Shown here one piece after another: positions 1,685 to 53,947 of a stretch of DNA of 64,000 bases. Made by a program: the position numbers and the translations under genes. The notes beneath the pieces are model-generated. The model made no database searches and was not told the DNA's origin. It was given only the letters and a program-made list of their open reading frames with translations. Each line of letters starts with the position of its first letter. Within the stretch, counting starts at the first letter, position 1. Location: the IMG/VR virus record IMGVR_UViG_3300032236_001613, positions 1-64,000 of that record, one strand, 5' to 3'.

Positions 1685-1703
1685 CATGGTATAAATATAG
1701 AAT

Positions 1704-3794
1704 ATGGCATATTTAAGCGACAACACAATAGTTTACGGTTCGGCAACAATATTAGGAAGCCTTGTAGTAAACGGCTCAGGAATTTTACCAGTTGATTCTG
1801 CTGGTAGTGTTCAAATTAGCAGCTCTGCAAGCACTACCTCTACCAACTCCGGTGCGTTAACTATTGTAGGCGGAGTAGGTATTGGCGGAGGATTATATGT
1901 TGGTGGAGTTATTACTGCTAGCAATATTGTTGTAACTCTTAATCCTGATAATGTTAATACTACTTGGGCAGTATACTACAATCCTACAACAAAAGCATTA
2001 ACTACCGCTAGTACATTTGTCGGATATTATGGTTCGGTTGGTTATATCGGCAGCAGAGGTTATACCGGCTCAATTGGATATACAGGTAGTATTGGTTATT
2101 ACGGTTCAATTGGATATACAGGTAGTATTGGTTATTACGGTTCAATTGGTTACACTGGTTCGGCAAGTACTGTAACTGGGTATACTGGATCAAGTGGCTA
2201 TATAGGTAGCCAAGGTGATAAAGGTGGTATGAGATATTCGTTTGATACCACGCTCGGCGGCACTCCTACTAACGGTTATATTAGATTTAGTGCAAATTCA
2301 AATCCAGGAATGCAACCGGGAATTATCTATATTAGTGCAGTTGATGTTAATGGACTTAGTTACACCGGAGTTATTCCCACCTGGGGATTAAGAACACAAT
2401 TATTACTTAAAAGTAATTCGAACTTATCGACTACAACAGTAGTACTTTCTATACAGAGCGGTATAACAACAGTAGGATCTACTCATTATACTGCAACTGT
2501 ATCTCTTTTATCAGGCGCTGTTCCGTCAACTAATGAACAACTTGTAGTTGATTATTACTTAGGTGGATTAATTGGCTATACTGGAAGTATTGGATACACT
2601 GGATCGATTGGTTATACTGGCAGTATTGGCTATTATGGATCAATTGGTTATACCGGTAGTATCGGATATTATGGGTCAATTGGTTATACCGGCAGTGTCG
2701 GATATTATGGTTCGATTGGTTATGTTGGTAGTCAAGGTCCTGCTGGAAGTTTAGGAACCTCTACATTTGCTATTATAACCGGAACTAGTGCTAATGCTAG
2801 TTATTCCATAATTTTTGCTAGTACAAGTTCTGGTACAGTAGCGTTAATGGGTGACAATGGTAATAATATAACTTACAATCCTTCCACCGATACACTTACT
2901 GTTCCTAATATAACCAGCACAAGTAGTATAGTTATTACAGGCATTGGTACATCAAATAGTACCAATACTGGCGCATTACAAGTTACCGGCGGTACAGGTA
3001 TCGGTGGTAACTTATATGTAGGCGGAAATATTGTTCAACCACTAAGCAATTCATATATTGCTTTTGGTACTACAATTAATGCACAGGCTGGTGCCAACTC
3101 ACAAGGATCTACCACAGTACCTAACTCAGTTGTACAATATACAACAGTCAGTGCTAGTTCTGCTACAACTCTTCCGATTGCAAATACCGGAACTTTAATA
3201 TTCATTGCAAACGATAATACTACTAATGCAATATCAGTATATCCTCCTTCCGGAGGAATTATTGATCAAGGTGCTGCAAATGCCGCAATATCTGTTCCGG
3301 CATTAGGAATGTGGGCAGGTGTAGCGTTAAGCACCATAAATTGGACTTCGTTTGTACCTTCACTGCAAGGAACTACAAATCAGCTTATTGTAACACAAGG
3401 AAACGGTGTAACAACGTTTAGTTTATCCCCGACTATTAGCACAACTGGTACAATTAGTATAACAAGCACTGCGAGTTCAATATCGAGTACAACAGGTGCT
3501 CTAGTTGTCACAGGAGGAGTAGGTATTGGCGGTAGTGTAAATATCGCAGGCACGTTAACTGTAGGGTCTAGTAACATTTTACTACAAGACCAAACTGGTA
3601 ATGTTAAAGTTACTGGTACAACTAATTCTACAAACACCACAACCGGTGCATTACAGGTAGTTGGCGGTGCCGGAATTGGTGGCAACATTTATACCGGCGG
3701 TCGTGTAGGATTTGTTAATCCTACTACTAATGCCAGCGCGGTATATATGAATTATAATACTGCTACTAATAGTTTAGACTTTTTATTCGGATAA
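1704..3794 (+). CDS. tail fibre protein with collagen-like repeats and TGAL(Q/V)VxGGxGIGG modules
   Basis: Two GYTGSI tracts, four STxTGALxVxGGVGIGG repeats, late promoter TATAAATA at 1690. Confidence 0.8.
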   Translation: MAYLSDNTIVYGSATILGSLVVNGSGILPVDSAGSVQISSSASTTSTNSGALTIVGGVGIGGGLYVGGVITASNIVVTLNPDNVNTTWAVYYNPTTKALTTASTFVGYYGSVGYIGSRGYTGSIGYTGSIGYYGSIGYTGSIGYYGSIGYTGSASTVTGYTGSSGYIGSQGDKGGMRYSFDTTLGGTPTNGYIRFSANSNPGMQPGIIYISAVDVNGLSYTGVIPTWGLRTQLLLKSNSNLSTTTVVLSIQSGITTVGSTHYTATVSLLSGAVPSTNEQLVVDYYLGGLIGYTGSIGYTGSIGYTGSIGYYGSIGYTGSIGYYGSIGYTGSVGYYGSIGYVGSQGPAGSLGTSTFAIITGTSANASYSIIFASTSSGTVALMGDNGNNITYNPSTDTLTVPNITSTSSIVITGIGTSNSTNTGALQVTGGTGIGGNLYVGGNIVQPLSNSYIAFGTTINAQAGANSQGSTTVPNSVVQYTTVSASSATTLPIANTGTLIFIANDNTTNAISVYPPSGGIIDQGAANAAISVPALGMWAGVALSTINWTSFVPSLQGTTNQLIVTQGNGVTTFSLSPTISTTGTISITSTASSISSTTGALVVTGGVGIGGSVNIAGTLTVGSSNILLQDQTGNVKVTGTTNSTNTTTGALQVVGGAGIGGNIYTGGRVGFVNPTTNASAVYMNYNTATNSLDFLFG

Positions 3795-3809
3795 TAGGAT
3801 TAATATATA

Positions 3810-5447
3810 ATGCCAGCAGTTGTTTTTACTAGCGTTTCGACTACATCGTGGACAGTACCTAATAATGTTTCTTCAATTACTATCGAAGCAATAGGCGGTG
3901 GCGGCGGTGGCGGAAATTGTACTTGCAACGGTCAAGGTGGTATTGGCGGAAATTACGCTAAAACTACTCTATCAGTTACCCCGGGATCGACCGTTTACAT
4001 CAAAGCCGGAAATAGTGCAAACCCTCAATCATCAGCTGGGGGTACTGCTGCTACTTCTGGAAACGATTCTTGGGCAAATACTGCAACTAGTACGCCGCCT
4101 ACTACTAGCACTACCGGTGTTTTAGCAAGAGGTGGCGGTAGCGTCAGCTCTTCTATTTACAAATGTATTACTTATTCAGGCGGAATTGGAGGATCTGCGA
4201 GCAGCTGCACCGGAGGTGGCGGTGGTGGAGCTGCAGGCCCTTTAGGTCCAGGAGGAAACGCTTGTAACACTAATCATGCCGGCGGAGGCGGCGGTAATGG
4301 TATTACAGGAGGTGGTGGCGCTAGCGGAATATCAGGAAGTACTGTTCCTTATTCTCCCTGGGGAGCATCTTACGGTCCGGGTAGTGGTGGTGGTGGAAAT
4401 GGTGGAAATGGAGGATTATACGGCGGCGGTGGCGCTAATCAAGCAACTGGTGCTCAAGGTATTGTTGTTATTTCCTATACTGGTATTTTAGGTAGATTAA
4501 CCAATACCGGAACATTATTGGTCAACGGTAGTTTTGATGAAATTACTAAAACTTCTACCAGCATGGATAGCACTACAATTTACGCCCCGAATACCGGAGG
4601 GTTTGACGAAGTTAGCGGAATGATCCTCAACGATAATAATTTATTATTAGATTTGAATGCTAATATTAATAGATACTACGTATCTAAAGATGCTACAACT
4701 ATATGGAATGATATTAGCAATAATCATTATAATTATACACCGTCGGCAGGTAATCCGCAATTTACTACTACTGGATCCATTGGTTATTATACATATAACG
4801 GAACTACCCAATATCATACAGTTAATAAGAATTTTGCTGACAATTTATCTAATATGACTGTAAGTGCGTGGGTTAGAAACAATCTTGGTGCAGCACAATT
4901 TAAAGTAATTGTAGGTAAAGGGTGGAACGGCACTCCTGGTACTGCGGGTTGGTTTTTAGGTGGAAATACCGGAAATATTGGTGGAACAACTGGAAATCCA
5001 AATTTCTATTTTCTTGTGCAAGATGCCGGAGGAGTACATTATAATCTAATAGCATCGCCTATTTTACCTAATTTTTCTGCATCAACATGGAGTCATGTAG
5101 TAGCTACACTCAGTGGCAGCGCAACCGGCACAATAGCATTATATTATAACGGGTTGCCGGTCGCTTCTGCTTTTGATGGATCCTCTAACAAAAATCTAAT
5201 AACTAGCTATAGCACAGGTAGTTTTGTTAGTGTCGCAAACGATAATTTATCAGAATTTTGGACAGGTGATATATCACAAGTTCAAATTTATAATCGTACA
5301 CTTAGTGCTACAGAAATTTTAACTAATTATAATTTTGATGCTGCAAAATATGGATTATCCCCTGTATCTACAGCAACTAGCTTAAGACTAACAACTTCAA
5401 CTACTTACATTGGTAATATATTTGATGAGGTTACAGGAGCTGTTTAA
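3810..5447 (+). CDS. Gly-rich adhesin N-domain fused to LamG domain
   Basis: WTVP..V.SITIEAIGGGGGGG...GAQGIVVISY glycine-rich domain, followed by LamG motifs (WSHVVATL, GDISQVQIYNRTLSATEI). Confidence 0.8.
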   Translation: MPAVVFTSVSTTSWTVPNNVSSITIEAIGGGGGGGNCTCNGQGGIGGNYAKTTLSVTPGSTVYIKAGNSANPQSSAGGTAATSGNDSWANTATSTPPTTSTTGVLARGGGSVSSSIYKCITYSGGIGGSASSCTGGGGGGAAGPLGPGGNACNTNHAGGGGGNGITGGGGASGISGSTVPYSPWGASYGPGSGGGGNGGNGGLYGGGGANQATGAQGIVVISYTGILGRLTNTGTLLVNGSFDEITKTSTSMDSTTIYAPNTGGFDEVSGMILNDNNLLLDLNANINRYYVSKDATTIWNDISNNHYNYTPSAGNPQFTTTGSIGYYTYNGTTQYHTVNKNFADNLSNMTVSAWVRNNLGAAQFKVIVGKGWNGTPGTAGWFLGGNTGNIGGTTGNPNFYFLVQDAGGVHYNLIASPILPNFSASTWSHVVATLSGSATGTIALYYNGLPVASAFDGSSNKNLITSYSTGSFVSVANDNLSEFWTGDISQVQIYNRTLSATEILTNYNFDAAKYGLSPVSTATSLRLTTSTTYIGNIFDEVTGAV

Positions 5448-5467
5448 ACTAGGATAAATATTAAACT

Positions 5468-8245
5468 ATGGCAAAACTACTCGGCGGAACAACAATTTAC
5501 GGTACAGCAACAGTTCAATCAACACTGTATGCCTCTGGAACTACATCGGCTACTAGCACATTAACCGGTGCACTAGTAGTCACAGGCGGCGTTGGTATTG
5601 GCGGAAATTTATATGTTGGCGGCAATATTGTAGGTAACGTTGTTGGGTATGCCGGTAGTATTGGGTATGTTGGTTCTAGAGGTTATACTGGTTCAGTAGG
5701 TTATACTGGTTCAGTAGGTTATACTGGATCAATTGGTTACACTGGTAGTGCAAGTACTGTTATAGGATATACTGGATCAGTAGGTTATACTGGTTCAGTA
5801 GGTTATACTGGTTCAGTAGGTTATACTGGATCAATTGGTTACACTGGTAGTGCAAGTACTGTTATAGGATATACTGGTAGTGCAGGTAGCAACGTAGCAA
5901 CAACAACCGCAACATATGTTATCATTACTGGTACTAATGTTAATGCTAATTTAAATTTATTACTTGCTAGTACTTCATCAGGAACTGTACTTGTAGTAGC
6001 AGACTCTAATAGTGGTATTACATATAACCCTAGTACTCGTCAATTATTAGTTACAAATATTGCAGCACCGTCTGCGACATCAGGGAACGGCAGTACTATT
6101 TCTATTGTTGCAGGCGCAGGCGCTACCGGTGCTAATCGAGGCGGTACCGCTACAATTGCCGGTGGTACTGCAGGATCAACTGGTATTGGTGGTGATCTTA
6201 TTCTACGTGGAGGTGGCGGTTCGAATGCCAATTCCGGAGGGTTGATAAGATTACAATTGGCTACAGCAACAAATACATTCTTTTCTTTCATGGAAGCCAC
6301 CGGCGGCACTTCGTTTACTGCCGTGCAAATGCTTAATAATAGCTTTTTTTCACTTACTCCGGCAGTTATCAGTGCAGCAGGAACTACAATAGGCACAGCA
6401 GCATTAATGCCTGGACAGTATGTTATCGTAAATTCTTCAACAGTTGGAACAAGTGTTGGAGTTCTATTGCCAAATCTTGGTTACAACGGTGCAATGTTTA
6501 CGATTTTTAATAAAAGTTCTAATGCTATTTCTATATTTCCTCCTGGGGCCGGGATACAAATCGATTCGTTAGGTGCAGGAAACCCACTTTCTCTCGCAGC
6601 TGGGGCTCAATTACTAATTGGAACCTCAGATAATGCAAACCAATATTATTCTATCTATAATAGCGGGGTTGGCAGTCCTGCATCATTAACTATAAACAGT
6701 AGTGCCATCAGCGGCGGAACATCTGGAAGATTACTATACGACAACGCCGGCACAGCAGGCGAAACAATCGGATTAGTTTGGTCTACATCAACTGGAGTTC
6801 AAAACTTAACATTAGGTTCTTCTAGTACAGATAGATCTAATATAATAGGAATTAGTACTCTTACTGTTAGCGTTACCAATACCGGCGCCTTAATATTAGG
6901 TAACTCTGTCTCGACTAATTTGGTCGGATCATCGGTGTATATTTACGGACAGCCTACAGGCGGTGGTGGTGCTGCCGGCAGCGTTACTATACAAGCCGGA
7001 ACGTCAGTTGTCGGTGCTGGTGGCATTTTAAACTTTGCTGCTGCTGGACCGACTTCAAGTGGCGGTGGTGGGTTTTATCTTAGTATGCCTTACGGAGCTA
7101 CTAGTAGTACCGTACAAATACTTGGTGGTATTGCAGGAAACACTGGAAATATTTACTTAACTGGGTTTAATTCTACCGTCGGCGCCCAACCGCCGGGATC
7201 GATATTCCTTACCGGTGGTAATCAACTAGCTGGTGGTGCTAACGGCGGATCTATTACTCTTACCGGTGGTAATCAACTAGCTGGTGGTGCTAACGGCGGA
7301 TCTATTACTCTTGTAGGTGGTGTTAGTACTGCATCTAATGCTGGCGGATCTATTAATTTTAACGTTGCATCAACAGCAAACTCCGCAGTAGTTCAAACTA
7401 AGATGACGGTGTCGCCTGCTATTAATGGAGTACAACTACAAAATAACGCATTATTATACTTTACTAATAATACAAACATTACTGCTACTGGTACTACACT
7501 AGCCACAGCATTTACATTAACTAATCAATATAATATTGTTACTTTCACATATCCGGGTGGTTCTGGTGTGTCGTTACCAACACCGGGAGCAGCTGGAACA
7601 GATATTACTATTATTAATAAAGGTACTAACAGCCTTAGTGTTTATCCAAACTCCGCTAGCGCATCAATAGATAGCGGTGCAGCAGGTGCTGCAATTACAT
7701 TAACAGCAGGAAGCCAATTAATAGTTGTATCATCATCTACTTCGCAATGGAGTACAGTTCTCAACACTGGTAACTTAGGCGGTGGTACACCTACACAGGT
7801 AAATGCTACTTCTGCAACTACAACAGGTACTTACTATATTCTTGGTGCTAGTACTTGGGGCACTGCAGCAACTATTACTATCACTACTACTTCTAAAGCA
7901 GTATCTTTCAACCCTGCAAACGGAATAGTTCAAGCAATTGACTTTATTGCAACATCGGATGCAAGATACAAGGATGTTACTGGCAAGTTAGAAAATGCTG
8001 TTAATTCTATTAAAAAACTTAACGGTGTTAAGTATCTTTGGAACGATCTAGCTAGACAGCGCAAAGGGGTATCCACTAGCGAAAGCCAAGTAGGTCTCAT
8101 TGCACAAGATGTGCAAATAGTATTACCAGAAGCAGTCGGTGGCGAACCTGATGACCTAGGAGTTAAATACGATAAAATAGTTCCGTTATTAGTTGAGGCT
8201 ATCAAGGAACTAGCAGAACGTATAGACAGGTTAGAAAAGAGATGA
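5468..8245 (+). CDS. long tail fibre with C-terminal peptidase S74 intramolecular chaperone
   Basis: C-terminal TSDARYKD...LNGVKYLWN...GLIAQDVQ.VLPEAV...VKYDKIVPLLVEAIKEL is the S74 autocleaving chaperone pattern. Confidence 0.88.
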   Translation: MAKLLGGTTIYGTATVQSTLYASGTTSATSTLTGALVVTGGVGIGGNLYVGGNIVGNVVGYAGSIGYVGSRGYTGSVGYTGSVGYTGSIGYTGSASTVIGYTGSVGYTGSVGYTGSVGYTGSIGYTGSASTVIGYTGSAGSNVATTTATYVIITGTNVNANLNLLLASTSSGTVLVVADSNSGITYNPSTRQLLVTNIAAPSATSGNGSTISIVAGAGATGANRGGTATIAGGTAGSTGIGGDLILRGGGGSNANSGGLIRLQLATATNTFFSFMEATGGTSFTAVQMLNNSFFSLTPAVISAAGTTIGTAALMPGQYVIVNSSTVGTSVGVLLPNLGYNGAMFTIFNKSSNAISIFPPGAGIQIDSLGAGNPLSLAAGAQLLIGTSDNANQYYSIYNSGVGSPASLTINSSAISGGTSGRLLYDNAGTAGETIGLVWSTSTGVQNLTLGSSSTDRSNIIGISTLTVSVTNTGALILGNSVSTNLVGSSVYIYGQPTGGGGAAGSVTIQAGTSVVGAGGILNFAAAGPTSSGGGGFYLSMPYGATSSTVQILGGIAGNTGNIYLTGFNSTVGAQPPGSIFLTGGNQLAGGANGGSITLTGGNQLAGGANGGSITLVGGVSTASNAGGSINFNVASTANSAVVQTKMTVSPAINGVQLQNNALLYFTNNTNITATGTTLATAFTLTNQYNIVTFTYPGGSGVSLPTPGAAGTDITIINKGTNSLSVYPNSASASIDSGAAGAAITLTAGSQLIVVSSSTSQWSTVLNTGNLGGGTPTQVNATSATTTGTYYILGASTWGTAATITITTTSKAVSFNPANGIVQAIDFIATSDARYKDVTGKLENAVNSIKKLNGVKYLWNDLARQRKGVSTSESQVGLIAQDVQIVLPEAVGGEPDDLGVKYDKIVPLLVEAIKELAERIDRLEKR
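7208..7312 (+). repeat. exact 51-bp in-frame tandem duplication (LTGGNQLAGGANGGSIT x2)
   Basis: Identical sequence at 7208-7258 and 7259-7309. Confidence 0.95.
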
Positions 8246-10656: not shown

Positions 10657-10686
10657 GGTAAATATTAGGATAATCCGGAGTAGTTA

Positions 10687-11481
10687 ATGACGGTTCCTAG
10701 TTCTCCTTATGTTAAATTAACTGATGTAATCACAGAGTTTGGTCCAACTGGTCCTGCTCCAGCAGCAAGATTTTTAGGATCATACAAAAAATCTCCCACT
10801 GGGCCTTATGTAGGAGTAACACCCGGTACTACAACTATTCCTAGTACTAACCCGGTGTACTTACACAGTTTCGGTGGCGAAGCTAAAGGAAATCCAGGCA
10901 CGTTTAGCTCGTCTACTGCCGGCTCCGGTACAGTTCCTATTCCTTCCGGAACTGTTAGTTTTATTGTTGAAGTTTGGGGTGGCGGTGGTGGTGGTGGATC
11001 GGGAAGTCAAATAAGATGTTTAAATAATGGATGTTTTATACAACAAGGTGGCGGAGGTGGAGGTGCTGGTGGTTACGCTAGAACGCCGGTCTCGATAAAA
11101 TCGAGTAACTGGGGTCAAACATTTAATTACACAGTCGGTGATGCAGGAGTCGGCGCTAATCATCCCGGAACGGTTGACGGGGGTACTAGCACAGTTAGCA
11201 TTGGTACATTTAATAGTCCATTTACTAATATAACAGCCTACGGCGGAAAACATGGCACAATTGCCAATTTCGGAGCAGGTGGAACCGCTGTAGGAGGAGT
11301 ATTTACCGCTACTGGACCTGTAGGGTGTGTAGGTGGGTGTAACACTGCAGGGTGTGGCGGTTGCGCATATGTTGGAGGAATATCGTCGCCAATAGGCGGG
11401 TACGGCGGGCCTAGTGGCATAGGTGTAGGGTCTTTCGGAGCACCGGGTACAGCAGGTTTAGTTAGATTTACTTGGACTTAA
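10687..11481 (+). CDS. glycine-rich receptor-binding adhesin, paralog of 8242..9051
   Basis: VITEFG, IVEVWGGGGGGG, WGQTFNYTVG, C-terminal GLVRFTWT. Confidence 0.7.
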   Translation: MTVPSSPYVKLTDVITEFGPTGPAPAARFLGSYKKSPTGPYVGVTPGTTTIPSTNPVYLHSFGGEAKGNPGTFSSSTAGSGTVPIPSGTVSFIVEVWGGGGGGGSGSQIRCLNNGCFIQQGGGGGGAGGYARTPVSIKSSNWGQTFNYTVGDAGVGANHPGTVDGGTSTVSIGTFNSPFTNITAYGGKHGTIANFGAGGTAVGGVFTATGPVGCVGGCNTAGCGGCAYVGGISSPIGGYGGPSGIGVGSFGAPGTAGLVRFTWT

Positions 11482-11505
11482 GTAAATAGTAAAAAGGTAT
11501 AAAAA

Positions 11506-12633
11506 ATGTTTGTAACCCCAACTGGAACTGTTTATTTAGGTACTGCAACTACTATAGCGCAAGTTACCCAACCGTTAAATTATTCAGCTACACTAACTGT
11601 AGCCGGCCAAGCATATTCAAGTGGATTTATAGACTATGGATTTGGATATTTTTTAGGCAGCGGAAATAGTTATCAATTATCCACACACGGTAACATAAGT
11701 CCTAATTTAATATATCCCGGCTTGGTTATAATGTACTTTGTTGACGAATGGACATCAGGCGGAGTGGCATCGGGTAGCACCATTTACCTCAAAGGATTTA
11801 CTAGCGACCCTGGACAGTCTTTTTTTACTTCTGTTACAGCTAATGGTGTTACTTTAACTTCAGCAAGTGCCACATATACATATTTTCCCACAACCGGCAC
11901 AGCTACTAGAGGAATAGCTTCATGGAGTTGGTTAGGACAATTTGGGTTAAAAAATATTTCTTCTACTACAATAACAATAAACGGATTAACACAAAACTTT
12001 AACCAATCTATAGAAGCAGAGCTTTCTGGCTATTACCCTACACAAGGAGTAATACATCTAAACACGAGTTCGGTTAGAAGACTTGGGCAGCATTCTACTG
12101 GAACAATTAGATTAAGTGATTTACGTAATCGTGCTATAACTAATATGACTGATCGGTATATCTATGCTTATACTTACAGTCTTGCTAACTATCCTACTAC
12201 AGCAAGTTATACTGTTAATCTTGCAACAGGAGCAGTAACCGGGCAGGCACAAGTTAATGGATATTCTGCAGAAGGATATCCTATAACGTATCCACAGCAA
12301 TTATGGCAAGGGACTTTAACCGATATTAGTTTATATTCCGTGCAAGCAGTATATAATACATCGACCTCAGGAACACTAACTCCTACATCCGGTGCGTTAA
12401 ACACATGGCATCAGTTTACCTCTACTGGCGCAACTACTGCATGGGCATTAACTTCAGGTGCGGTTGCTACTAATAGTAATATTACTCTTAAAATACAAAT
12501 TAAAGAAAATTCATCGTCGTTAATTGTGGATAGCTGTTTAGTTACATTAGCAAATTATAGTGCGGTAGCACCTAGCGGTGGAGGCGGCGGCGGTGGAGGC
12601 GGCGGTGGAGGCGGAAACCTTAAGCCGTTCTAA
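11506..12633 (+). CDS. putative adhesin/tail tip protein with poly-Gly C-terminus
   Basis: Thr/Ser/Gly-rich beta-type sequence; QSIEAEL...LNTSSVRRL...GTIRLSDL segment; G13 tract at C-terminus. Confidence 0.55.
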   Translation: MFVTPTGTVYLGTATTIAQVTQPLNYSATLTVAGQAYSSGFIDYGFGYFLGSGNSYQLSTHGNISPNLIYPGLVIMYFVDEWTSGGVASGSTIYLKGFTSDPGQSFFTSVTANGVTLTSASATYTYFPTTGTATRGIASWSWLGQFGLKNISSTTITINGLTQNFNQSIEAELSGYYPTQGVIHLNTSSVRRLGQHSTGTIRLSDLRNRAITNMTDRYIYAYTYSLANYPTTASYTVNLATGAVTGQAQVNGYSAEGYPITYPQQLWQGTLTDISLYSVQAVYNTSTSGTLTPTSGALNTWHQFTSTGATTAWALTSGAVATNSNITLKIQIKENSSSLIVDSCLVTLANYSAVAPSGGGGGGGGGGGGGNLKPF

Positions 12634-15674: not shown

Positions 15675-15703
15675 AGTACTGTTATTTATTGATAAATATC
15701 AGC

Positions 15704-16462: not shown

Positions 16463-16492
16463 CCTTCATAGTAGGGTAAGATAAATAAAAGT

Positions 16493-21814: not shown

Positions 21815-21844
21815 AGGTAAATAAAAAGGATAAGGAGCACTTAG

Positions 21845-40052: not shown

Positions 40053-40064
40053 TAAATATGTAAT

Positions 40065-40934: not shown

Positions 40935-40943
40935 AATAACTGT

Positions 40944-41933
40944 ATGAATCTCATACAGTCTACACTTCAGATGGTTTTGCCATCTAAACGAAAAAACACC
41001 AGTGGAGGGTGGGTTTCGTTTAATTCCCCATGCTGCGTTAACCGTGGAGAAACTCGAGATACAAAATTAAGAGGTGGAGTTCTTTTTGAGAGTGACGGGT
41101 TTATCTATCATTGTTTTAATTGTGGGTTTAAAGCAGGGTGGAAGCCCGGTAAAAAACTAAGTAAGAACGCTAAAAATTTATTTAAATGGTGCGGAGTATC
41201 TGATGATGATGTAAATGCTTTGAGCTTTGAAGCATTCCGCAATATTAACAACGACGGAGAACCAATTAAAGAATTGGATCTTACATTAAAAGAAAGATCT
41301 TTACCCAAAGATACTTACTCTTTTGATGTATGGAATAGTTACGGATGTCAAGATGAAAATTTCATAGCTTGTAAGCAATACGTACTTGATAGGGGACTAG
41401 GGCTAGCAGATTATAAATGGCATTGGACGCCCGAACCTGGGTATCAAGATCGTGTTATAATACCCTTCTACCATGATAAGAAAATTGTTGGATATACTGG
41501 TAGAAAGATTTATCCAGGGAAGCCTAAGTATCTATCAGATAGCCAATCGGGGTATGTGTTCAATTTGGATGCTCAAACTTATGACAGAGAATTTGTTATT
41601 GTTGTAGAAGGGCAGATCGACGCAATTGCAATTAGCGGTTGCGCCATTATGACTAACGAACCTAATGAAATACAATGTATGAGAATTAACTCATTAGGTA
41701 AAAAAGTTATTGTGGTGCCTGATAGAGATAAAGCTGGAGCAAAGTTATTAGCTGCTGCAATACAAAATAACTGGGGAATGAGTTTACCTCCGTGGGATGA
41801 AGATATTAAAGACGTTGCAGATGCTGTAAAAAGGTACGGTAAGATTTATACACTTGCCACGATTGTGCACTATCAAGAAGATAATAAGATAAAAATAGAG
41901 TTACAAAAAAAGAAACTGGAGAAACTAACATAA
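40944..41933 (+). CDS. DNA primase (T4 gp61-like)
   Basis: Zn finger (PCC...YHCFNCG), RVIIPF, GR...PKY, TOPRIM VEG.IDA, PDRD.AG; sigma70 promoter TTGACA-17-TAAAAT just upstream. Confidence 0.9.
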   Translation: MNLIQSTLQMVLPSKRKNTSGGWVSFNSPCCVNRGETRDTKLRGGVLFESDGFIYHCFNCGFKAGWKPGKKLSKNAKNLFKWCGVSDDDVNALSFEAFRNINNDGEPIKELDLTLKERSLPKDTYSFDVWNSYGCQDENFIACKQYVLDRGLGLADYKWHWTPEPGYQDRVIIPFYHDKKIVGYTGRKIYPGKPKYLSDSQSGYVFNLDAQTYDREFVIVVEGQIDAIAISGCAIMTNEPNEIQCMRINSLGKKVIVVPDRDKAGAKLLAAAIQNNWGMSLPPWDEDIKDVADAVKRYGKIYTLATIVHYQEDNKIKIELQKKKLEKLT

Positions 41934-43387: not shown

Positions 43388-43396
43388 ATATGTAAT

Positions 43397-44080
43397 ATGT
43401 CAAAATTTGTAACTCCTATAGTAATACATAAAAATCTTAATCTTGCAATTTGGGATAACGATCAATTGCGCCCAGACGTTAGAAAAGCACTACTGCGTAT
43501 TGCTAAGGAGTTCTACAAATTTTTAAAAGTATCCGCACCTATACAGGATATTGTTATATACGGAAGTCAAGCTAATTATAATTTTACATCTAAATCAGAT
43601 CTTGACTTACATATTGTTTTCGATTATAATGCTATTAAATGTGATGAACCAATAGATGCTTTATTCGATACTAAAAGGAAACTTTGGAAAGAACAACACG
43701 ATATTACTATTTACGGAGTTCCAATTGAGTTATATGCAGAAGATATTCGCGTTAAACCCGTAAGTGCAAGCTATAGTGTTTTAAGAAATTCCTGGATAAA
43801 ACATCCTAATATCGATAACATTGAATGGAACAAAAACGAAGTTAAATCATCGGTAAATTTTTGGCAACAACTTATTAATTCAACAATTAAGATACAAGAC
43901 TATCACGTAGCAGAAAAACTGTTAGCTGTTTTAGTAAAGTTTAGAAAGGTTGGCCTTAAACGTAACGGTGAGTTTGGACCAGAGAACTTAACTTTTAAAA
44001 GTTTGAGAAACTCTGGCGACATTGAAAAATTAAATGTTTTTATTAACAAAGTAAAAGATCAAAATTTAAGTTTAGACTAA
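43397..44080 (+). CDS. Pol-beta-superfamily nucleotidyltransferase
   Basis: hGS..NY....SDLDLH motif, IELY; late promoter. Confidence 0.75.
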   Translation: MSKFVTPIVIHKNLNLAIWDNDQLRPDVRKALLRIAKEFYKFLKVSAPIQDIVIYGSQANYNFTSKSDLDLHIVFDYNAIKCDEPIDALFDTKRKLWKEQHDITIYGVPIELYAEDIRVKPVSASYSVLRNSWIKHPNIDNIEWNKNEVKSSVNFWQQLINSTIKIQDYHVAEKLLAVLVKFRKVGLKRNGEFGPENLTFKSLRNSGDIEKLNVFINKVKDQNLSLD

Positions 44081-46173: not shown

Positions 46174-48240
46174 TTAATACTGGCTAGGATTTAATAAAGA
46201 ACTTCTAATAGCATCTAATATAGGTTTAAGTCCGGTTGCACTTCCTTTAGCAAGATCATACATGAATTCTGCTTTTTCTTGATCGTTCATACCTGACATA
46301 GCCGAATTAAACGCTCTATCCACAATTAATCTTAACGGACTATTATAGGAGGATACATCAAGATCACTAGTAGTGTTTAGTGCCGCTATAAATTTTTTAA
46401 TTTTTGCACCGAGTGAAGAAGCTGTCTGTGCATCATCGTAATTCTGTGCAGCATTAGCTCTATGAATTCTTGCGTTAACAACACTAATAGCATTATGACC
46501 TAATTTTGTAAGAACTGGGCGTATTCTATTAATTACAGCTGCTTTGTCTCGATCGAGATTGAGATTTTTACTAACATCAGGACGTCGTGAAGACATTTTT
46601 TCTCTGTCAACTGCACCTCTAGCAATCCACATCTGTTCTAAAGTACCTAATTGTTCTCTTAAAAGATCGAATGTATTTGGTGCACGAGGATCTGGTCTAT
46701 TTGGAATTCCCATTCTTGCTCTCATTACGCGAGGATCAACATCTCTATCAACTTCGTCGTCGTCACCGGAAAGTCTAAACAACTCAGGGTTAACTTCCTC
46801 ACCACCTTTATAAGCAAGAATCTGGAAAGGCATAGTATTGTCTCTAGCTGGATTGTATTCTTCTCTTCTTTGTGCAGCAGCCTTTGACATACGTTCGATA
46901 TGTTTCTTATCTGGTTTAACTGCAGCCATTCCGTCTCTATAGACTAAAATAACGAAATTGTCAGGATTTGATTTAAATTCCTGATTCATTAATCGTAAGC
47001 TAATGTTGTGCTTTTCGTATGGTGCTTCAGCACTAAGTTTATTACGACGGTGTAAGAAACGAATTAGATACTGACCACTTTTTCTTTGTGTTTGGCTAAG
47101 TCCAGTTTCGGGATCGCCTAGCATTTGAGTTAAAGTACTGGATTCATTAATCATAATCGATTCGATTAATTCTTCGTTCCATACTTTAAATGCTTCTTGT
47201 TCAATGCTTTCGAAAACTTGTTCTTTAGCATATTTGACTTTAAAATTCTTAAACTGCTCTGTTAAGTAGCTGGAGTTTTTCATTTTCATTTCGGTTGACT
47301 CTCTTCTTGGTAATCTTGGGCGGTCTTGGCCAATAGATCTATTGTCGTTGCCACCTCTGTTATTATTTCTACTATCCGCTTCGGGCCATGCGTAAATGTA
47401 ATAGCCCATTAAGTTATTATCCATAAAATCACGTACAACGTGGAATCGTATTCCCATTGCAGAGTATTCTCTTATTTCTGCTCTATATCCAGGGATGTTA
47501 GGATGTTCTACACCCGGATCACCTAGACGCTGTGCATTGTTTTCTAACCATCGACCAACTTGTTGCATTTCAGCCATTGATGTAAAGTTATCAGCACCTG
47601 CTCCTGGTCCTTGTGGATTAAACCCACCAGGTCCACCACGATGCCCAATCATCTGCTGCATACCGGGCTGATTGAGATGCGCAATCACTGTAATATCTTC
47701 AATTGGTGTTCTTGTTAACTGTCCAAAATGCTGGCGTCCAATAACACGCACTGCATTTTTCATATATCCAGGTAGATTTCTAACCTGATGCCATTCGATT
47801 TCACCGCCAGGTACAGTAACTTCTCTGTGTAGTATGTCTGGTAAAGTATTTGGCTCTACAGGTACTTCAGGCTCACCATACCCAGGATCATTAGCTCTAG
47901 GAGCTAACTCTGCATCGGGAATCTCGTCCTGCCCTACATCTAGCTGATCAATACGGCCAAGGTAATCACGCATTTGATCGTTAGGGTTTAGTCTTACATT
48001 GCGTGTACGTTCAGCACTGGCACGATTTAACTCAGCACGACCTCCTGCAGGAGCATCCTTTTTAGCAGGTTCCGAAGCTGCGGGCTCTGATTTCGCCGGG
48101 GCATTTTTAACGCCACCTACAACATCATTAAAATCATCAAACTCGGGAAACGGATTTATTTTTACCCGAGGTTTTTCAGCAGTAGGTTTAGCAGATGTGC
48201 TATCCGGTGCTTTCTTCTTTTTGTCATCATTATCAGGCAT
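46174..48240 (-). CDS. large multi-segment late protein, probably virion internal
   Basis: Late promoter upstream; Pro/Asp-rich N-part; central YLTE/ESIE/LIES/MINE cluster. Confidence 0.5.
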   Translation of the reverse strand: MPDNDDKKKKAPDSTSAKPTAEKPRVKINPFPEFDDFNDVVGGVKNAPAKSEPAASEPAKKDAPAGGRAELNRASAERTRNVRLNPNDQMRDYLGRIDQLDVGQDEIPDAELAPRANDPGYGEPEVPVEPNTLPDILHREVTVPGGEIEWHQVRNLPGYMKNAVRVIGRQHFGQLTRTPIEDITVIAHLNQPGMQQMIGHRGGPGGFNPQGPGAGADNFTSMAEMQQVGRWLENNAQRLGDPGVEHPNIPGYRAEIREYSAMGIRFHVVRDFMDNNLMGYYIYAWPEADSRNNNRGGNDNRSIGQDRPRLPRRESTEMKMKNSSYLTEQFKNFKVKYAKEQVFESIEQEAFKVWNEELIESIMINESSTLTQMLGDPETGLSQTQRKSGQYLIRFLHRRNKLSAEAPYEKHNISLRLMNQEFKSNPDNFVILVYRDGMAAVKPDKKHIERMSKAAAQRREEYNPARDNTMPFQILAYKGGEEVNPELFRLSGDDDEVDRDVDPRVMRARMGIPNRPDPRAPNTFDLLREQLGTLEQMWIARGAVDREKMSSRRPDVSKNLNLDRDKAAVINRIRPVLTKLGHNAISVVNARIHRANAAQNYDDAQTASSLGAKIKKFIAALNTTSDLDVSSYNSPLRLIVDRAFNSAMSGMNDQEKAEFMYDLAKGSATGLKPILDAIRSSLLNPSQY

Positions 48241-48299
48241 TAAAAACCCCTAAAATGTTTTATTAATTATTTATCAAGGTCGTTCTAATAAATATTACT

Positions 48300-48755
48300 A
48301 TGCAAATACAAGAACTGCTATTAGAACTTGCTGATCAACCCTACGACTATCGATTAATCTTCCAAGATCAAACCTTGCACAAATATCGATTTTATAACGA
48401 AAAAAAGTTAATGTATTATGTATTTGTTGATAGATTACAAGAAAATCAAGTACCATACCTAGCAGTAATGTTTCAACAAGTAGATCCTAACGATTTGTGG
48501 TACTCGGGGGATAAAGTTACCGGAACAGGCGATGCTTATCGAGTATTTGCTACTGTAGCTAAAATTATTAACGATGATATAGCCAAGTACGGAGCCGAAG
48601 GACAAATGATATTTGCAGGAGAGGGCGAAAGTAGAAATAAACTCTACGATCGCATAGCTAAAAACCTAAGCCGTTATGTACCTATGTATCAACTAGATCA
48701 TGTTGAAACCGAAGGACCTACTCATGTCTACCACTTTAACAAAATCAATAAATGA
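48300..48755 (+). CDS. putative virion-packaged protein
   Basis: MQIQELLLE N-tag; TGTGDA.RVFATV...SR.KLY.R motif. Confidence 0.55.
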   Translation: MQIQELLLELADQPYDYRLIFQDQTLHKYRFYNEKKLMYYVFVDRLQENQVPYLAVMFQQVDPNDLWYSGDKVTGTGDAYRVFATVAKIINDDIAKYGAEGQMIFAGEGESRNKLYDRIAKNLSRYVPMYQLDHVETEGPTHVYHFNKINK

Positions 48756-49174: not shown

Positions 49175-49972
49175 TTATAATCTATAACGTCCTACACGAT
49201 AAACATTCTTAGCACCACGAACAGTTTCTCCTGTTCCTAATGCTCTTATTGCAGCTTGTAAGTCTACACCCTTGCTGTTAGCCCAGGCTTCTAAATCCTG
49301 CACTACATACTGTTTACCGCTTAATCGAGAAGTATTACGAGGATTGCAGATCTGTATAAGATACCCATTATGTCCTCGATCAACGACCTTATACTCTTTA
49401 ATACTTGAACCTTTCAATTTTCGATAATCATCAGCACCCCAACTTACTTCACTATCATCGTGAGGAGTTTGATCAACTTTTACTGGGATGTTTAATTTTC
49501 GGCATTGAGACTGAAATCTTTTTAAATGTCCTCGTAATCCTCGAGTATTCCAATCCTCTTGTTTTATCCAAACTTCTTTAACGCAGCTTAATGGTATATC
49601 TCCCATGGCTCTTTCTTCTTCTTCGGAGCTATGACCGCCGGGGGCTATCTGTAGATTGTCAGGATCGTAATCACTTAATACTTCCCAGTTGAACGGTAGT
49701 ATTTTAACACGATGCCTTAATTTATTTTGATCTATAACAAAGGTAACATGTGCTGTACTTTTATCGGCCCAAAGATTAACTGCGTTCCAGTTTATATTAC
49801 TAAACCATAATCGAGGATTTCTAGTTAAACTGACACTGGTATGCGCTATAACACCGTCGTTTGAAAATGCTTTTATAAAACCAGATTTTAGTATTTCAAA
49901 AGCATTGTTTAAAGTAGTGCCATGATATAAATCTTGACGATTGTTTTCTAATAATAATTCATTTAGACGCAT
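49175..49972 (-). CDS. putative ADP-ribosyltransferase-fold protein
   Basis: LYHGT...I..SG, VSLTR, EEEE: H-S-E ART-like motif order; MRLNELLLE N-tag. Confidence 0.6.
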   Translation of the reverse strand: MRLNELLLENNRQDLYHGTTLNNAFEILKSGFIKAFSNDGVIAHTSVSLTRNPRLWFSNINWNAVNLWADKSTAHVTFVIDQNKLRHRVKILPFNWEVLSDYDPDNLQIAPGGHSSEEEERAMGDIPLSCVKEVWIKQEDWNTRGLRGHLKRFQSQCRKLNIPVKVDQTPHDDSEVSWGADDYRKLKGSSIKEYKVVDRGHNGYLIQICNPRNTSRLSGKQYVVQDLEAWANSKGVDLQAAIRALGTGETVRGAKNVYRVGRYRL

Positions 49973-49984
49973 AATAGATATTTA

Positions 49985-51397: not shown

Positions 51398-52281
51398 TGT
51401 TTATGCTTCTTACTGTGCACAGCATCCTTCTCTGGCTCACTGTCTACGTCAAAATCAAATCCATGTTTGTCATCAGATCGATCAGGTAATGCTAAGGGTT
51501 CTTCTTCAGTGTCTAAATCAGCTAATCGATTACGCATAGCTTTTACTTGATCAGGACTCATTTGATCAGTCTCTGACTTATCCGATACTCCGGATAATGC
51601 TTTGACTCCTGCTAACTGTGCTAATCTATCTAACCCAAACTCTGCAGCACTGTGCGCTGCTGCCTTTGTAGCAATATCAGCAGCTTGAGGTTCTTGACTA
51701 TCTTTAGGTTCGTCATCTAGTGTACCTGCAACTCTTTGATCTACATAAGATCCTACATCGGTTTCGTCAACTATATTTCCTTCTTCATCTGCGGTAGAAT
51801 CTACGCCATATGTTTGCGGATCGTACTCAAGACTTACAGATTCGAATTTTTTGGTGTTAGGATCTTGATAAGTTAATAAAGCTTCATAGGGATTTTCATC
51901 ACCAAACGATGTGTGTAACCACGGTACTCCACCTTCGCTGACTCCCGTTTCAAAATGTGAACCCCAGGGCATAGTTCCATGCGGCCCGTTACCAATCTCG
52001 GTTACATCATTTACACCAGGTTGCCATTCTTCAAACTCGGGTGCTTCACTATAACTAGAATCCAAATAAAGCGTACCCATATTCTTTACAGTCCAACTAG
52101 TAGCTGCAGCTACTAGTCCATCGATCATTGAACCGGCTTCAACTGCTGAAGCAGCAGCCGCTGTAGCAGCCACAGGCTCCGCAGCAGTACCTACAGGCAA
52201 CTTAGCACCTGTGGCCGCAGCTATTCCTGCTGCTCCTAGACCTTTGAGAAAATCTCTACGGGAAATTTCATATATACGCAT
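51394..52281 (-). CDS. acidic protein with twin-arginine (Tat)-like signal
   Basis: MRIYE-ISRRDFLKGLGAAGIAAA; late promoter. Confidence 0.6.
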   Translation of the reverse strand: MRIYEISRRDFLKGLGAAGIAAATGAKLPVGTAAEPVAATAAAASAVEAGSMIDGLVAAATSWTVKNMGTLYLDSSYSEAPEFEEWQPGVNDVTEIGNGPHGTMPWGSHFETGVSEGGVPWLHTSFGDENPYEALLTYQDPNTKKFESVSLEYDPQTYGVDSTADEEGNIVDETDVGSYVDQRVAGTLDDEPKDSQEPQAADIATKAAAHSAAEFGLDRLAQLAGVKALSGVSDKSETDQMSPDQVKAMRNRLADLDTEEEPLALPDRSDDKHGFDFDVDSEPEKDAVHSKKHKQ

Positions 52282-52366
52282 AATGTTTTATTTACCGGCA
52301 ACACAGACCTTTTCGCGCGAAGCGCCGAGCGCAGATTTTTTTATAACCCCGATAAATACCCAGACA

Positions 52367-52714
52367 ATGCATATCAAAGAACTGGTTACCTTAGACGAAC
52401 ACTGGCTACAAACAGCAGCTCAACAACTACAACCCGAACAACTACGTCAACGTTTACAAAACCTTGAACAATGGTTCTCCGACGAAGGCTCAGCTGCTGC
52501 AGATATGATCGAAACTTATAACGAATGGATACAGGGCACGGCAGATCCAGAATCAGTCCAAATGGCTAATCAACAACTGGTACGCTTGCTAAAATACTTG
52601 GGACTGGCCGGAATCGCTGTACTACCAGGTAGCACTTTCTTACTACCAGTCTTGATTAAAATAGCTCAACATTACGGCATAAAACTAATACCCGACCCTA
52701 TTAAACCACACTAA
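52367..52714 (+). CDS. small protein with hydrophobic C-terminal segment
   Basis: Start MHIKELVTLDE after TAAATA; LGLAGIAVLPG..LLPVLIK. Confidence 0.55.
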   Translation: MHIKELVTLDEHWLQTAAQQLQPEQLRQRLQNLEQWFSDEGSAAADMIETYNEWIQGTADPESVQMANQQLVRLLKYLGLAGIAVLPGSTFLLPVLIKIAQHYGIKLIPDPIKPH

Positions 52715-52958: not shown

Positions 52959-53237
52959 CTAAAAACTAATACCATTGTCAACAAAATACCCTTCAACAAT
53001 GTTTCGAACTAATTGCGGGTGACAATGCACATACTCACTGCGTACCGTAAACCTGTCCTTTATTATGCTTAATATCCTGCTTTCATGCAACCGATCAGGT
53101 ATACTATACGTTTTTAAAAAATAACAACTGGGGTTGGCTGTCTTATATGCTCTTAGCCTACTACTGGGATTGCCTGTGATTCCTAACTTACAACGGTGCG
53201 GCTTGTCTGGATCTACCATGATATAATAATAAAGCAT
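52959..53237 (-). CDS. GIY-YIG/T5orf172-like protein
   Basis: YYIM...KLGIT.NP..RL..Y.TANP...E..I...EY. Confidence 0.7.
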   Translation of the reverse strand: MLYYYIMVDPDKPHRCKLGITGNPSSRLRAYKTANPSCYFLKTYSIPDRLHESRILSIIKDRFTVRSEYVHCHPQLVRNIVEGYFVDNGISF

Positions 53238-53297
53238 ACGGCTTATTTAATACTAGAATCACTATAACTACCCAAAAAAATTACTGCGCAAAATTTT

Positions 53298-53594
53298 TTA
53301 TGGTGGGAAATTTTTGAATGAGGCAGTTTTGACCCATGCATCAGGCACCATACGATGCTTGCTGACAAATAAATCATGCAATTGATCACCTGTGACATTA
53401 TAACGACGACAGACTTTTTGCATGATTTGATCAATTATGTCATAGTTAAACTTGAGCCCTTGACTGTGTCTGACCCTTAATGCACGCTCTAAAGCAGCTA
53501 CAGCTTTACTGGGATGAGGGGTTCCTGAAACATGTGCAGGCTTCATGGACTGTTGAGAATCAAATAGGTCGATTAAAGATCTTAAGGAACGCAT
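53298..53594 (-). CDS. small late protein
   Basis: TATAAATA-5-ATG; LHDLFVSKH...PD.W. Confidence 0.55.
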   Translation of the reverse strand: MRSLRSLIDLFDSQQSMKPAHVSGTPHPSKAVAALERALRVRHSQGLKFNYDIIDQIMQKVCRRYNVTGDQLHDLFVSKHRMVPDAWVKTASFKNFPP

Positions 53595-53947
53595 ACGAAT
53601 ATTTATATACATTGTAGAGAGGCCTATAGTACACGCAAAAAATTGCGCTGCAAAAAATAAAGACCACGCAGATCTCGGGGCCTGGTGGTTTTACGACCCC
53701 GGGGTATGGTTAGCAAGCCCCAACAGCAGCACAGCACGCAGCTGAGCACTATATACCTCCCGTGGGGTCTATATGCCTCCCACCTGAGCCGGCCGGCACA
53801 GCTGCCCCGGAAAATTTTTTCTTTTAGTTTTCCGAGAAAAAGATAGCTTATTGTGCCGTTGGGAGAGCCTCGCAATAAAAAAGCACGGGCTAGGGTTTTT
53901 GTAATTAGATAATAGTACAGTTGTGCTATATTATATACGCTGTTAGT

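What the first reader, a model, noticed from the sequence alone, without database searches (positions are those of the whole stretch)
1690..53605. Late transcription is largely leaderless: TAAATA, 5-8 nt, ATG at 16 genes
Seen: TAAATA lies 5-8 nt before the ATG, with no SD, at genes starting 1704, 5468, 15674(-), 15704, 16493, 22535, 26682, 29274, 40065, 43397, 48300, 49972(-), 52281(-), 52367, 53237(-) and 53594(-). High-copy sheath and tube genes instead have TAAATA plus a leader with GGAG. Some sigma70 promoters show the same geometry (40944, 60944). Established: T4 gp55 late promoters are TATAAATA with the TSS about 6-7 nt downstream. Inference: the phage sets protein stoichiometry through leaderless versus SD-led mRNAs, and may be insensitive to, or exploit, shut-off of canonical initiation.
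Basis: partly seen in the sequence, partly recalled or inferred. Interest (0 to 1): 0.6.

Follow-up and report, generated by a model that had tools for sequence, protein, structure and literature searches.

The report
Leaderless late genes in jumbo phage
In this uncultivated 328-kb freshwater phage and its relatives, about half of the T4-style late promoters, and some ordinary promoters, sit so close to the start codon that the mRNA must begin at or within about three bases of the AUG; each gene keeps its arrangement across the clade, whereas T4, RaK2 and XaC1 lack it and PA5oct has one case.

Summary
All 16 sites have TAAATA, 5-8 nt, then the first ATG of an ORF. Across the 328-kb genome, 38 genes have the motif 4-8 nt before the start (about 3 expected). 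Another 42 have it 15-31 nt upstream with a Shine-Dalgarno (SD) leader, and few fall between. The close-spaced genes lack an SD, start with ATG only, and have a pyrimidine at -1 in 37 of 38.

The phage encodes a gp55-family late sigma. Sigma70-type promoters show the same geometry at their own canonical spacing (6 nt), which independently calibrates the start site.

Orthologues in about 140 related contigs keep the arrangement gene by gene. The adaptor gene has it in 59 of 60, and TerL in 54 of 56, directly after a covarying terminator. Sheath, tube, capsid, scaffold and protease genes stay SD-led.

T4, RaK2 and XaC1 have no such sites and PA5oct has one.

Best reading: gp55-type late promoters producing leaderless or nearly leaderless mRNAs for low-copy virion and packaging genes. 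No 5' ends could be mapped, because no RNA runs exist.

The ATAAATA late promoter was already predicted in relatives; the leaderless geometry appears unreported.

The parts
1692..1706 (+). TAAATA, 6 nt, ATG of a 696-aa tail-fibre-like protein (full TATAAATA at 1690)
5455..5470 (+). TAAATA, 7 nt, ATG of a 925-aa tail fibre protein
15672..15706 (.). Back-to-back late promoters in a 29-nt divergent intergenic region. The minus strand has TAAATA, 8 nt, ATG at 15674 (virion structural protein). The plus strand has TAAATA, 5 nt, ATG at 15704 (head-tail adaptor Ad2).
   Evidence: conserved in 59 of 60 (plus gene) and 55 of 60 (minus gene) unique orthologous regions
16482..16495 (+). TAAATA, 5 nt, ATG of a 291-aa homing-endonuclease-like/DUF7487 protein
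22490..22537 (+). Hairpin plus T-run, then CTAAATA, 5 nt, ATG of a 389-aa second tube-like protein
   Evidence: 36 of 37 unique orthologous upstream regions keep terminator, CTAAATA and the 5-nt spacing
26640..26684 (+). Intrinsic terminator (26640-26663 plus T-run), 3 nt, TAAATA (26671-26676), 5 nt, ATG of the large terminase
   Evidence: hairpin covariation
29261..29276 (+). TAAATA, 7 nt, ATG of a 556-aa virion structural protein; the motif lies at the end of TerL
   Evidence: orthologues have spacings of 4-7 nt in 39 of 40
40053..40067 (+). TAAATA, 6 nt, ATG of a 289-aa virion structural protein, in an 18-nt divergent intergenic region
   Evidence: its position-matched (syntenic) gene in PA5oct is that phage's only site of this kind
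43385..43399 (+). TAAATA, 6 nt, ATG of a 227-aa protein (phrog_36119)
48289..48302 (+). TAAATA, 5 nt, ATG of a 151-aa DUF6934 protein with N-terminus MQIQELLLE
49970..49984 (-). TAAATA, 6 nt, ATG of a 265-aa protein (MRLNELLLE...; weak PARP-like match)
52279..52294 (-). TAAATA, 7 nt, ATG of a 295-aa protein with a Tat signal peptide
52353..52369 (+). TAAATA, 8 nt, ATG of a 115-aa ORF. This is the weakest of the 16: the base at -1 is A, and the ORF could also start at a GTG at 52211 that overlaps the divergent gene.
53235..53249 (-). TAAATA, 6 nt, ATG of a 92-aa protein
53592..53607 (-). Full TATAAATA, 5 nt, ATG at 53594 (98 aa). An upstream in-frame ATG at 53612 overlaps the motif.
18410..18448 (+). 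SD-led late promoter: TAAATA, 30-nt leader with GAGGAG, ATG of the tail sheath gene
   Evidence: 15 of 15 unique orthologues are leadered with GGAG
21818..21847 (+). SD-led late promoter: TAAATA, 21-nt leader with AAGGAGC, ATG of the tail tube gene
10659..10689 (+). SD-led: TAAATA, 22-nt leader with GGAG, ATG of a 264-aa protein
11483..11508 (+). SD-led: TAAATA, 17-nt leader with AAGG, ATG of a 375-aa protein
48238..48273 (-). SD-led: TAAATA, 27-nt leader with AGGGG, ATG at 48240 of a 688-aa protein; divergent partner of 48300
40909..40946 (+). Sigma70-type leaderless geometry: TTGACA, 17 nt, TAAAAT, 6 nt, ATG of the gene syntenic with the PA5oct primase
60942..60979 (-). Sigma70-type leaderless geometry: TTGACG, 17 nt, TATAAT, 6 nt, ATG at 60944
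54183..54219 (+). Sigma70-type leaderless geometry: TTGACA, 16 nt, TAAACT, 6 nt, ATG at 54217

Best explanation
(A)TAAATA is the -10-type box of a T4-style late promoter. Host RNA polymerase reads it when carrying the phage's gp55-family sigma (305 aa, encoded outside the window at genome position 295185-296102). As in T4, the box needs no -35 element and directs initiation about 6 nt downstream. At roughly half of these promoters the 6th to 9th base after the box is the A of an ATG. Those mRNAs therefore start with, or within about 3 nt of, their AUG and carry no Shine-Dalgarno sequence; ribosomes must initiate on the 5'-terminal AUG. The other half have 11-26-nt leaders with a GGAG-type SD. 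Which class a gene belongs to is fixed gene by gene across the clade. Fibres, adaptor, a second tube-like protein, terminase and minor virion proteins are leaderless. Sheath, tube, capsid, scaffold and protease are SD-led. The likely role is to set low versus high translational yield. Shown here: the motif, its spacing, the lack of SD, the ATG-only rule, the pyrimidine at -1, conservation, the gp55 gene and the absence of the trait from isolates. Inferred: the promoter function, the exact start site, late timing, the translation mode and the stoichiometric role.
For: Geometry: the spacing histogram is bimodal, 38 genes at 4-8 nt and 42 at 15-31 nt with a near-empty zone at 9-14 nt. A model in which leaders must be about 0-3 nt or long enough to hold an SD predicts this zone. 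Start codons: ATG in 40 cases, TTG in 1, GTG in 0. Base -1 is T or C in 37 of 38, against 47% elsewhere, which is the preferred pyrimidine-purine start-site pair. SD cores are present in 16%, against 58-71%. Both spacing classes share the same flanks: A before the motif, no G after it, nothing at -35. The motif is directional: 70:5, 59:7 and 45:1 sense to antisense in three genomes. Sigma: a gp55 homologue matches phrog_12791 at 8e-86 and the T4 gp55 family at 4e-24. The T4 review places the late TATA box about one helical turn upstream of the start, at the -10 position, with no -35 element. Independent calibration: sigma70-type promoters peak at exactly 6 nt before an ATG in G000, G001 and G002 (8, 8 and 6 genes). 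No room for a leader: TerL has a covarying terminator ending 3 nt before TAAATA in 54 of 56 unique relatives. The adaptor gene and its divergent neighbour share a 24-30-nt intergenic region holding both motifs. Twelve of the 38 genes are in divergent pairs. Gene starts are firm: an in-frame stop lies 3-108 nt upstream, only 4 of 38 have a downstream SD-preceded alternative, and adaptor alignments in most of the 80 related loci run from residue 1 or 2. Conservation by gene: G000 leaderless-late genes stay so in 8 of 11 (G001) and 6 of 7 (G002) orthologues, and none became leadered. Rare natural swaps to TAAATA plus an SD leader, or to an SD alone, occur in L272 and L048. Functions are structural or packaging.
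Against: No transcript 5' end has been mapped, because no RNA run holds this phage. The host is unknown, so its ability to translate leaderless mRNA is unverified. The T4 co-activator gp33 and clamp gp45 were not detected, so the initiation mechanism, and possibly start-site placement, may differ from T4. With 6-8-nt spacings the transcript may carry 1-3 extra bases. With 4-nt spacing the start would have to shift by one. 'Late' timing rests on analogy and on gene function only. Some close-spaced genes look metabolic rather than structural by their N-terminal sequence (for example at 176394 and 182625, not family-scanned). The stoichiometry idea rests on a handful of genes of known copy number.
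Confidence: 0.75

Rival explanations
1. TAAATA next to the ATG is not a promoter here. It is an A/U-rich, SD-independent ribosome-loading element (for example S1-dependent) on longer polycistronic late mRNAs that start further upstream.
For: Twenty-six of the 38 genes follow a co-directional gene at short distance, so read-through transcripts are conceivable. A/U-rich leaders are known translational enhancers (own knowledge).
Against: The same motif sits 15-31 nt upstream of SD-led genes, where it cannot be a ribosome site. It follows covarying terminators by 3 nt. It occurs in 18-38-nt divergent intergenic regions. Sigma70-type -10 boxes show the same abutting geometry at their own spacing. 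The pyrimidine at -1 and the ATG-only rule fit a start site. A gp55 sigma is encoded.
Confidence: 0.07
2. Artefact: chance matches in AT-rich intergenic DNA, TAA stop codons of upstream genes, or wrongly called starts whose true start is a downstream SD-led codon.
For: TAAATA contains a stop codon and the genome is 37% G+C. The full octamer TATAAATA is not enriched. Two of the 16 sites (52367, 53594) have alternative upstream starts.
Against: 38 observed against about 3 expected. None occur in T4, or in the RaK2 and XaC1 regions examined, and one occurs in PA5oct, all of similar composition. Spacing stays fixed while the intervening bases vary across 50-60 orthologues. Only 4 of 38 have a downstream SD-led alternative start.
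Confidence: 0.02
3. One reading: leaderless late mRNAs let the phage escape or exploit a phage-induced shut-off of SD-dependent initiation (specialised or remodelled ribosomes).
For: The phage encodes a ribosomal protein bS21 homologue next to a ClpX-like ATPase. Ribosome variants that favour leaderless mRNA are described in E. coli (own knowledge).
Against: Sheath, tube, capsid, scaffold and protease, the proteins needed in the highest copy number late in infection, are SD-led. bS21 is present in PA5oct, which has one such site, and absent from G001, which has 24. No IF3 was found. Early-type sigma70 promoters also show the geometry, which suggests that unmodified host ribosomes already cope.
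Confidence: 0.08

Closest known systems
Bacteriophage T4 late transcription (TATAAATA box, gp55 sigma, gp33 co-activator, gp45 sliding clamp)
   Same: A gp55-family sigma is encoded. There is an A/T -10-type box with core TAAATA, no -35 element, A/T-rich DNA downstream, and a position in front of virion genes.
   Different: T4 has no gene start 4-8 nt after TAAATA, against 24 at 15-31 nt. The octamer is relaxed to (A)TAAATA. The sigma is 305 aa, with about 150 extra N-terminal residues. gp33 and gp45 homologues were not found.
Predicted ATAAATA late promoter of RaK2-like jumbo phages (CBB, GAP32; PMC5259590) and the related PA5oct and XaC1
   Same: Same motif, same gp55-like sigma without detectable gp33 or gp45, a syntenic structural module, and TerL and adaptor 42-52% identical.
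   Different: In RaK2 and XaC1 every TAAATA examined has a 20-54-nt SD leader. PA5oct has one close-spaced site in 394 genes. Three of four PA5oct orthologues of G000 leaderless genes are leadered. The CBB paper does not mention leaderless transcripts.
Bacterial leaderless genes with a -10 box adjacent to the ORF (Deinococcus-Thermus, PMC12340547; in-silico survey PMC3160421; GeneMarkS-2 leaderless model)
   Same: A -10-like box ending about 6 nt before an ATG, no SD, and the same in-silico signature. The sigma70-type cases here match this exactly.
   Different: Most cases here use a phage sigma's box rather than the host's. They coexist with strong GGAG-type SD genes in a genome whose promoters look proteobacterial. 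The host is unknown.
Thermus phages phiYS40 and P23-45, whose middle and late transcripts are largely leaderless (own knowledge, not read here); lambda cI mRNA from PRM
   Same: Phage genes expressed from promoters that abut the AUG.
   Different: Those phages use the host sigma in a host phylum where leaderless mRNA is the norm. They are unrelated to the T4 superfamily and have no gp55-type promoter.

Membership tests
T4-type (gp55-dependent) late promoter system | Phage encodes a gp55-family late sigma | tested here: met
   Genome position 295185-296102 (+), 305 aa. It matches T4 gp55 at 1.3e-8, phrog_12791 at 8e-86 and phrog_234 at 4e-24. Orthologues are present in G001-G003 and PA5oct.
T4-type (gp55-dependent) late promoter system | TATAAATA-like -10 box without a -35 element, A/T-rich downstream, upstream of virion genes and directional | tested here: met
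   The core is (A)TAAATA, with no conservation at -35. Sense to antisense is 70:5. The motif sits in front of fibre, adaptor, sheath, tube and terminase genes. The strict octamer is not enriched.
T4-type (gp55-dependent) late promoter system | gp33 co-activator | tested here: not met
   phrog_254 gives no hit in G000, G001 or PA5oct, while T4 rings at 1.6e-33. The marginal phmmer hit (E 0.015) is methyltransferase-like.
T4-type (gp55-dependent) late promoter system | gp45 sliding-clamp activator | tested here: not met
   There is no match to the T4 gp45 protein or to phrog_223. A divergent clamp cannot be excluded.
T4-type (gp55-dependent) late promoter system | Transcription starts about 6 nt after the box, late in infection and dependent on gp55 | not testable with these tools
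   No RNA runs hold the phage.
Leaderless mRNA genes | -10 box ending about 5-8 nt before the start codon | tested here: met
   38 genes with TAAATA at 4-8 nt and 8 with a sigma70-type -10 box at 5-8 nt (six of them at 6 nt).
Leaderless mRNA genes | No Shine-Dalgarno sequence | tested here: met
   16% have a 4-nt SD core, against 58-71% in the other classes.
Leaderless mRNA genes | AUG, not GUG or UUG, as start codon | tested here: met
   ATG 40, TTG 1, GTG 0.
Leaderless mRNA genes | Mapped 5' end at the A of the AUG, and translation from it | not testable with these tools
   No RNA data and no cultured member of the clade. The best adaptor match among isolates is 44% identical.

The most novel reading that the evidence does not exclude
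A large clade of freshwater jumbo phages has rebuilt the T4 late programme into two translational channels. SD-led mRNAs serve the bulk virion proteins. True 5'-AUG leaderless mRNAs serve dozens of low-copy proteins. This would be happening in a host that otherwise uses strong GGAG-type SDs, so efficient leaderless initiation would need a phage-encoded aid (for example its bS21 homologue or an unrecognised factor) or initiation coupled directly to the gp55 polymerase.
Probability: 0.12. Interest if true: 0.8.

Novelty: new variant of a known kind. Interest (0 to 1): 0.6.

Why it matters
T4-type late promoters and leaderless mRNAs are each well known. Their systematic combination, at 19-38 genes per genome and conserved gene by gene across more than 100 environmental contigs, was not found in the paper searches made here. 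It is absent from the cultured relatives T4, RaK2 and XaC1, and PA5oct has a single site.

Practical consequences:
- Gene callers and promoter scans should expect starts without an SD in these phages.
- The clade offers natural matched pairs of the same gene with and without a leader (adaptor in L272, TerL in L048, the 25031 orthologues). These could be used to measure what a leader is worth.
- The geometry hints that the unknown host translates leaderless mRNA readily, which narrows the host search.

Tried and rejected
RNA evidence: the look-up of sequencing runs returned only DNA holders, from two studies.

5' structure: the folding energy of the first 40 nt is weaker in close-spaced genes than in the genome at large. 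It does not differ from SD-led late genes (p = 0.15) and tracks G+C content, so it is not informative.

Translation factors:
- The phage bS21 does not correlate with the trait.
- No IF3 was found.
- No second sigma70-type sigma was found (11.6 bits, below the cut-off).

gp33: the marginal phmmer hit at 194530 is methyltransferase-like.

Host:
- ClpX relatives in bacterial genomes are only about 50% identical. They are mostly Gammaproteobacteria mixed with other phyla, so the result is inconclusive.
- No pmoC was found, so nothing links these phages to the methanotroph phages.

Correction of my own first guess: the gene at 32119 is UvsX, not the capsid protein. The capsid gene lies at genome position 309219.

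Literature: six full-text searches found no paper that connects gp55-type promoters with leaderless mRNAs. The PA5oct paper does not mention leaderless transcripts.

Full report
**What the window is.** The window is the first 64 kb of a 328-kb virus record that is 92% complete and came from a metagenome. Related DNA occurs in a freshwater metagenome. It is a jumbo myovirus. Its structural module is syntenic with Pseudomonas phage PA5oct, and its large terminase is 52% identical to PA5oct's and 43% identical to those of RaK2-like phages. No isolate is closer than about 44% identity for the adaptor protein. IMG/VR, however, holds hundreds of related contigs.

**The observation.**
- I called ORFs without reference to the motif: greedy longest ORFs, taking the first ATG.
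- Across the whole genome the distance from TAAATA to the start is sharply bimodal. There are 38 genes at 4-8 nt (mode 5), 4 at 9-14 nt and 42 at 15-31 nt. About 3 are expected in the first bin (Poisson 7e-28).
- TAAATA is the single most frequent hexamer in the position where an SD normally sits.
- The close-spaced genes rarely have an SD core: 16%, against 71% of long-spaced genes and 58% of the rest.
- They start with ATG almost without exception: 40 ATG, 1 TTG, 0 GTG.
- They have T or C at -1 in 37 of 38 cases, against 47% elsewhere. That is the pyrimidine(-1)/purine(+1) pair that RNA polymerase prefers at start sites (own knowledge).
- Start calls are firm. In-frame stops lie 3-108 nt upstream, and only 4 of 38 genes have a downstream SD-preceded alternative.

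**Is the motif a promoter?**
- Both spacing classes share the same flanks: A before the motif, almost no G after it, and nothing conserved at -35.
- In regions between co-directional genes the motif points with the genes: 70:5, 59:7 and 45:1 in three clade genomes.
- The genome encodes a gp55-family sigma at 295185-296102. It matches phrog_12791 at 8e-86 and the T4 gp55 family at 4e-24. Its own promoter is sigma70-like and has an SD leader.
- The T4 review places the late TATA box about one helical turn upstream of the start, at the -10 position, with A/T-rich DNA downstream and no -35 element.
- With T4's box at -13 to -6 (own knowledge), a 5-nt spacing after TAAATA puts +1 on the A of the ATG.
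- gp33 and gp45 were not found. The same was reported for CBB.

**An independent calibration.**
- Sigma70-type promoters (TTGACN, 16-18 nt, TANNNT) have a well-established start-site distance.
- In G000, G001 and G002 they show a spike at exactly 6 nt before an ATG: 8, 8 and 6 genes at 5-9 nt.
- Two unrelated promoter types therefore each abut an ATG at their own canonical distance. Selection on start-site position explains this; a sequence-specific ribosome site does not.

**No room for leaders.**
- TerL is preceded, in 54 of 56 non-identical orthologous regions, by a 10-bp hairpin plus T-run, then 3 nt, TAAATA, 5 nt (4 nt in one) and ATG.
- Three stem pairs show compensatory double changes in 33 cells. 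None of 500 shuffles reaches the observed score, and slid controls collapse.
- The adaptor gene and its divergent neighbour are separated by only 24-30 nt in most relatives, and that stretch holds both motifs back to back.
- The adaptor has a spacing of exactly 5 nt in 59 of 60 unique regions, while the five bases themselves vary.
- The second tube-like gene keeps terminator, CTAAATA and the 5-nt spacing in 36 of 37 regions, at 38-55% protein identity.

**Which genes fall in each class.**
- Leaderless-type genes in the window are tail fibres, a virion protein, the Ad2 adaptor, a tube-like protein, the terminase and further virion proteins, plus small unknowns.
- Sheath and tube are SD-led here and in every relative examined.
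- The capsid, scaffold and protease genes elsewhere in the genome are also SD-led.
- Reciprocal-best-hit orthologues keep their class: 8 of 11 in G001 and 6 of 7 in G002 remain leaderless-late, and none became leadered.
- Rare swaps exist. The adaptor in L272 has TAAATA plus a 16-nt AAGGAGA leader. TerL in L048 is SD-led. Orthologues of 25031 split between 5/7-nt and 17-24-nt spacings.
- This pattern fits selection on expression level. It does not prove it.

**How widespread the trait is.**

| Genome or region | Gene starts with TAAATA at 4-8 nt | At 15-31 nt |
|---|---|---|
| G000 | 38 | 42 |
| G001 | 24 | 38 |
| G002 | 19 | 33 |
| PA5oct | 1 | 38 |
| T4 | 0 | 24 |
| RaK2, 42-kb region | 0 | (leaders 20-45 nt) |
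| XaC1, 41-kb region | 0 | (leaders 27-54 nt) |

 Three of four PA5oct orthologues of G000 leaderless genes carry the late motif with a leader. The trait therefore arose within, or on the branch to, the uncultivated freshwater clade.

**What is known and what is new.**
- The ATAAATA late promoter was already predicted for CBB and GAP32.
- Leaderless genes with a -10 box beside the ORF are known in bacteria and in Thermus phages (own knowledge).
- I found no paper that links gp55-type promoters to leaderless mRNAs.

**Limits.**
- No 5' ends are available.
- The host is unknown. ClpX relatives are uninformative and pmoC is absent.
Bulk virion proteins need an SD, and the phage bS21 gene is present in PA5oct and absent from G001, so it does not track the trait.

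Noticed in passing
window 48300(+), 49972(-), 51025(-), 51397(-), 52281(-); also genome 80-89 kb and elsewhere: Twenty-five otherwise unrelated proteins in G000 (6.5% of genes, against 0.26% at internal methionines) begin with M-[RKQ]-[ILV]-x-E-[LF], for example MRIQELLLE. G001 has 13 and G002 has 7. The tag resembles the T4 N-termini MKTYQEFIAE at 65718(-) and 66415(-) and MAKINELLRE at 107323(+). From memory these are the internal-protein capsid-targeting sequence and the cleaved N-terminus of gp24; I did not check the T4 annotation. That would suggest a large set of capsid-packaged proteins cleaved by the prohead protease. Half of the tagged proteins are in the leaderless class.
   Followed up: partly
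window 26682-29258 (+): The large terminase is 858 aa here, against about 529 aa in most relatives. The extra segment holds a LAGLIDADG domain (residues 290-359), placed before most of the Terminase_6N match (420-616). It is probably an intein with a homing endonuclease. RaK2-like TerL genes are similarly long.
   Followed up: partly
genome 150578-152012 (+), outside the window (locus L140): A ClpX-like ATPase with a zinc finger (414 aa) overlaps the start of a ribosomal protein bS21 homologue (68 aa; 58 bits). bS21 is also present in G002 and PA5oct, but not in G001 or T4.
   Followed up: partly
window 51394-52281 (-): A leaderless-class 295-aa protein carries a twin-arginine (Tat) signal peptide (SRRDFLK; Pfam TAT_signal, 4e-7). 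This is a phage protein probably exported to the periplasm.
   Followed up: no
window 49175-49972 (-): A 265-aa protein with the N-terminal tag has a weak, sub-threshold match to the PARP catalytic domain around LYHGT (E 0.003). Similar 'YHGT' N-termini occur in two G001 proteins. It may be a packaged ADP-ribosyltransferase, in the manner of T4 Alt.
   Followed up: no
window 30961-31005 (+): A perfect TATAAATA is followed at once by a 13-bp hairpin and a T-rich tail, about 95 nt before the ATG at 31064. The gene at 31064 precedes UvsX and is possibly the SSB gene. This is either a late promoter with a structured leader or a bidirectional terminator that overlaps the box.
   Followed up: no
window 25004-25033 (+) and orthologues in L009-L088: Orthologues of gene 25031 alternate between TAAATA plus 5 or 7 nt and TAAATA plus a 17-24-nt leader containing AGGA. 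The difference looks like a 16-nt insertion or deletion, giving a natural leaderless/leadered polymorphism.
   Followed up: partly
genome 295185-296102 (+), outside the window: The gp55 homologue is 305 aa. About 150 N-terminal residues are absent from T4 gp55 (185 aa). gp33 and gp45 homologues are undetectable, so late-promoter activation may work differently from T4.
   Followed up: partly
window 62240-62314 (-): A tRNA-Lys (UUU) gene, the only tRNA in the window.
   Followed up: no
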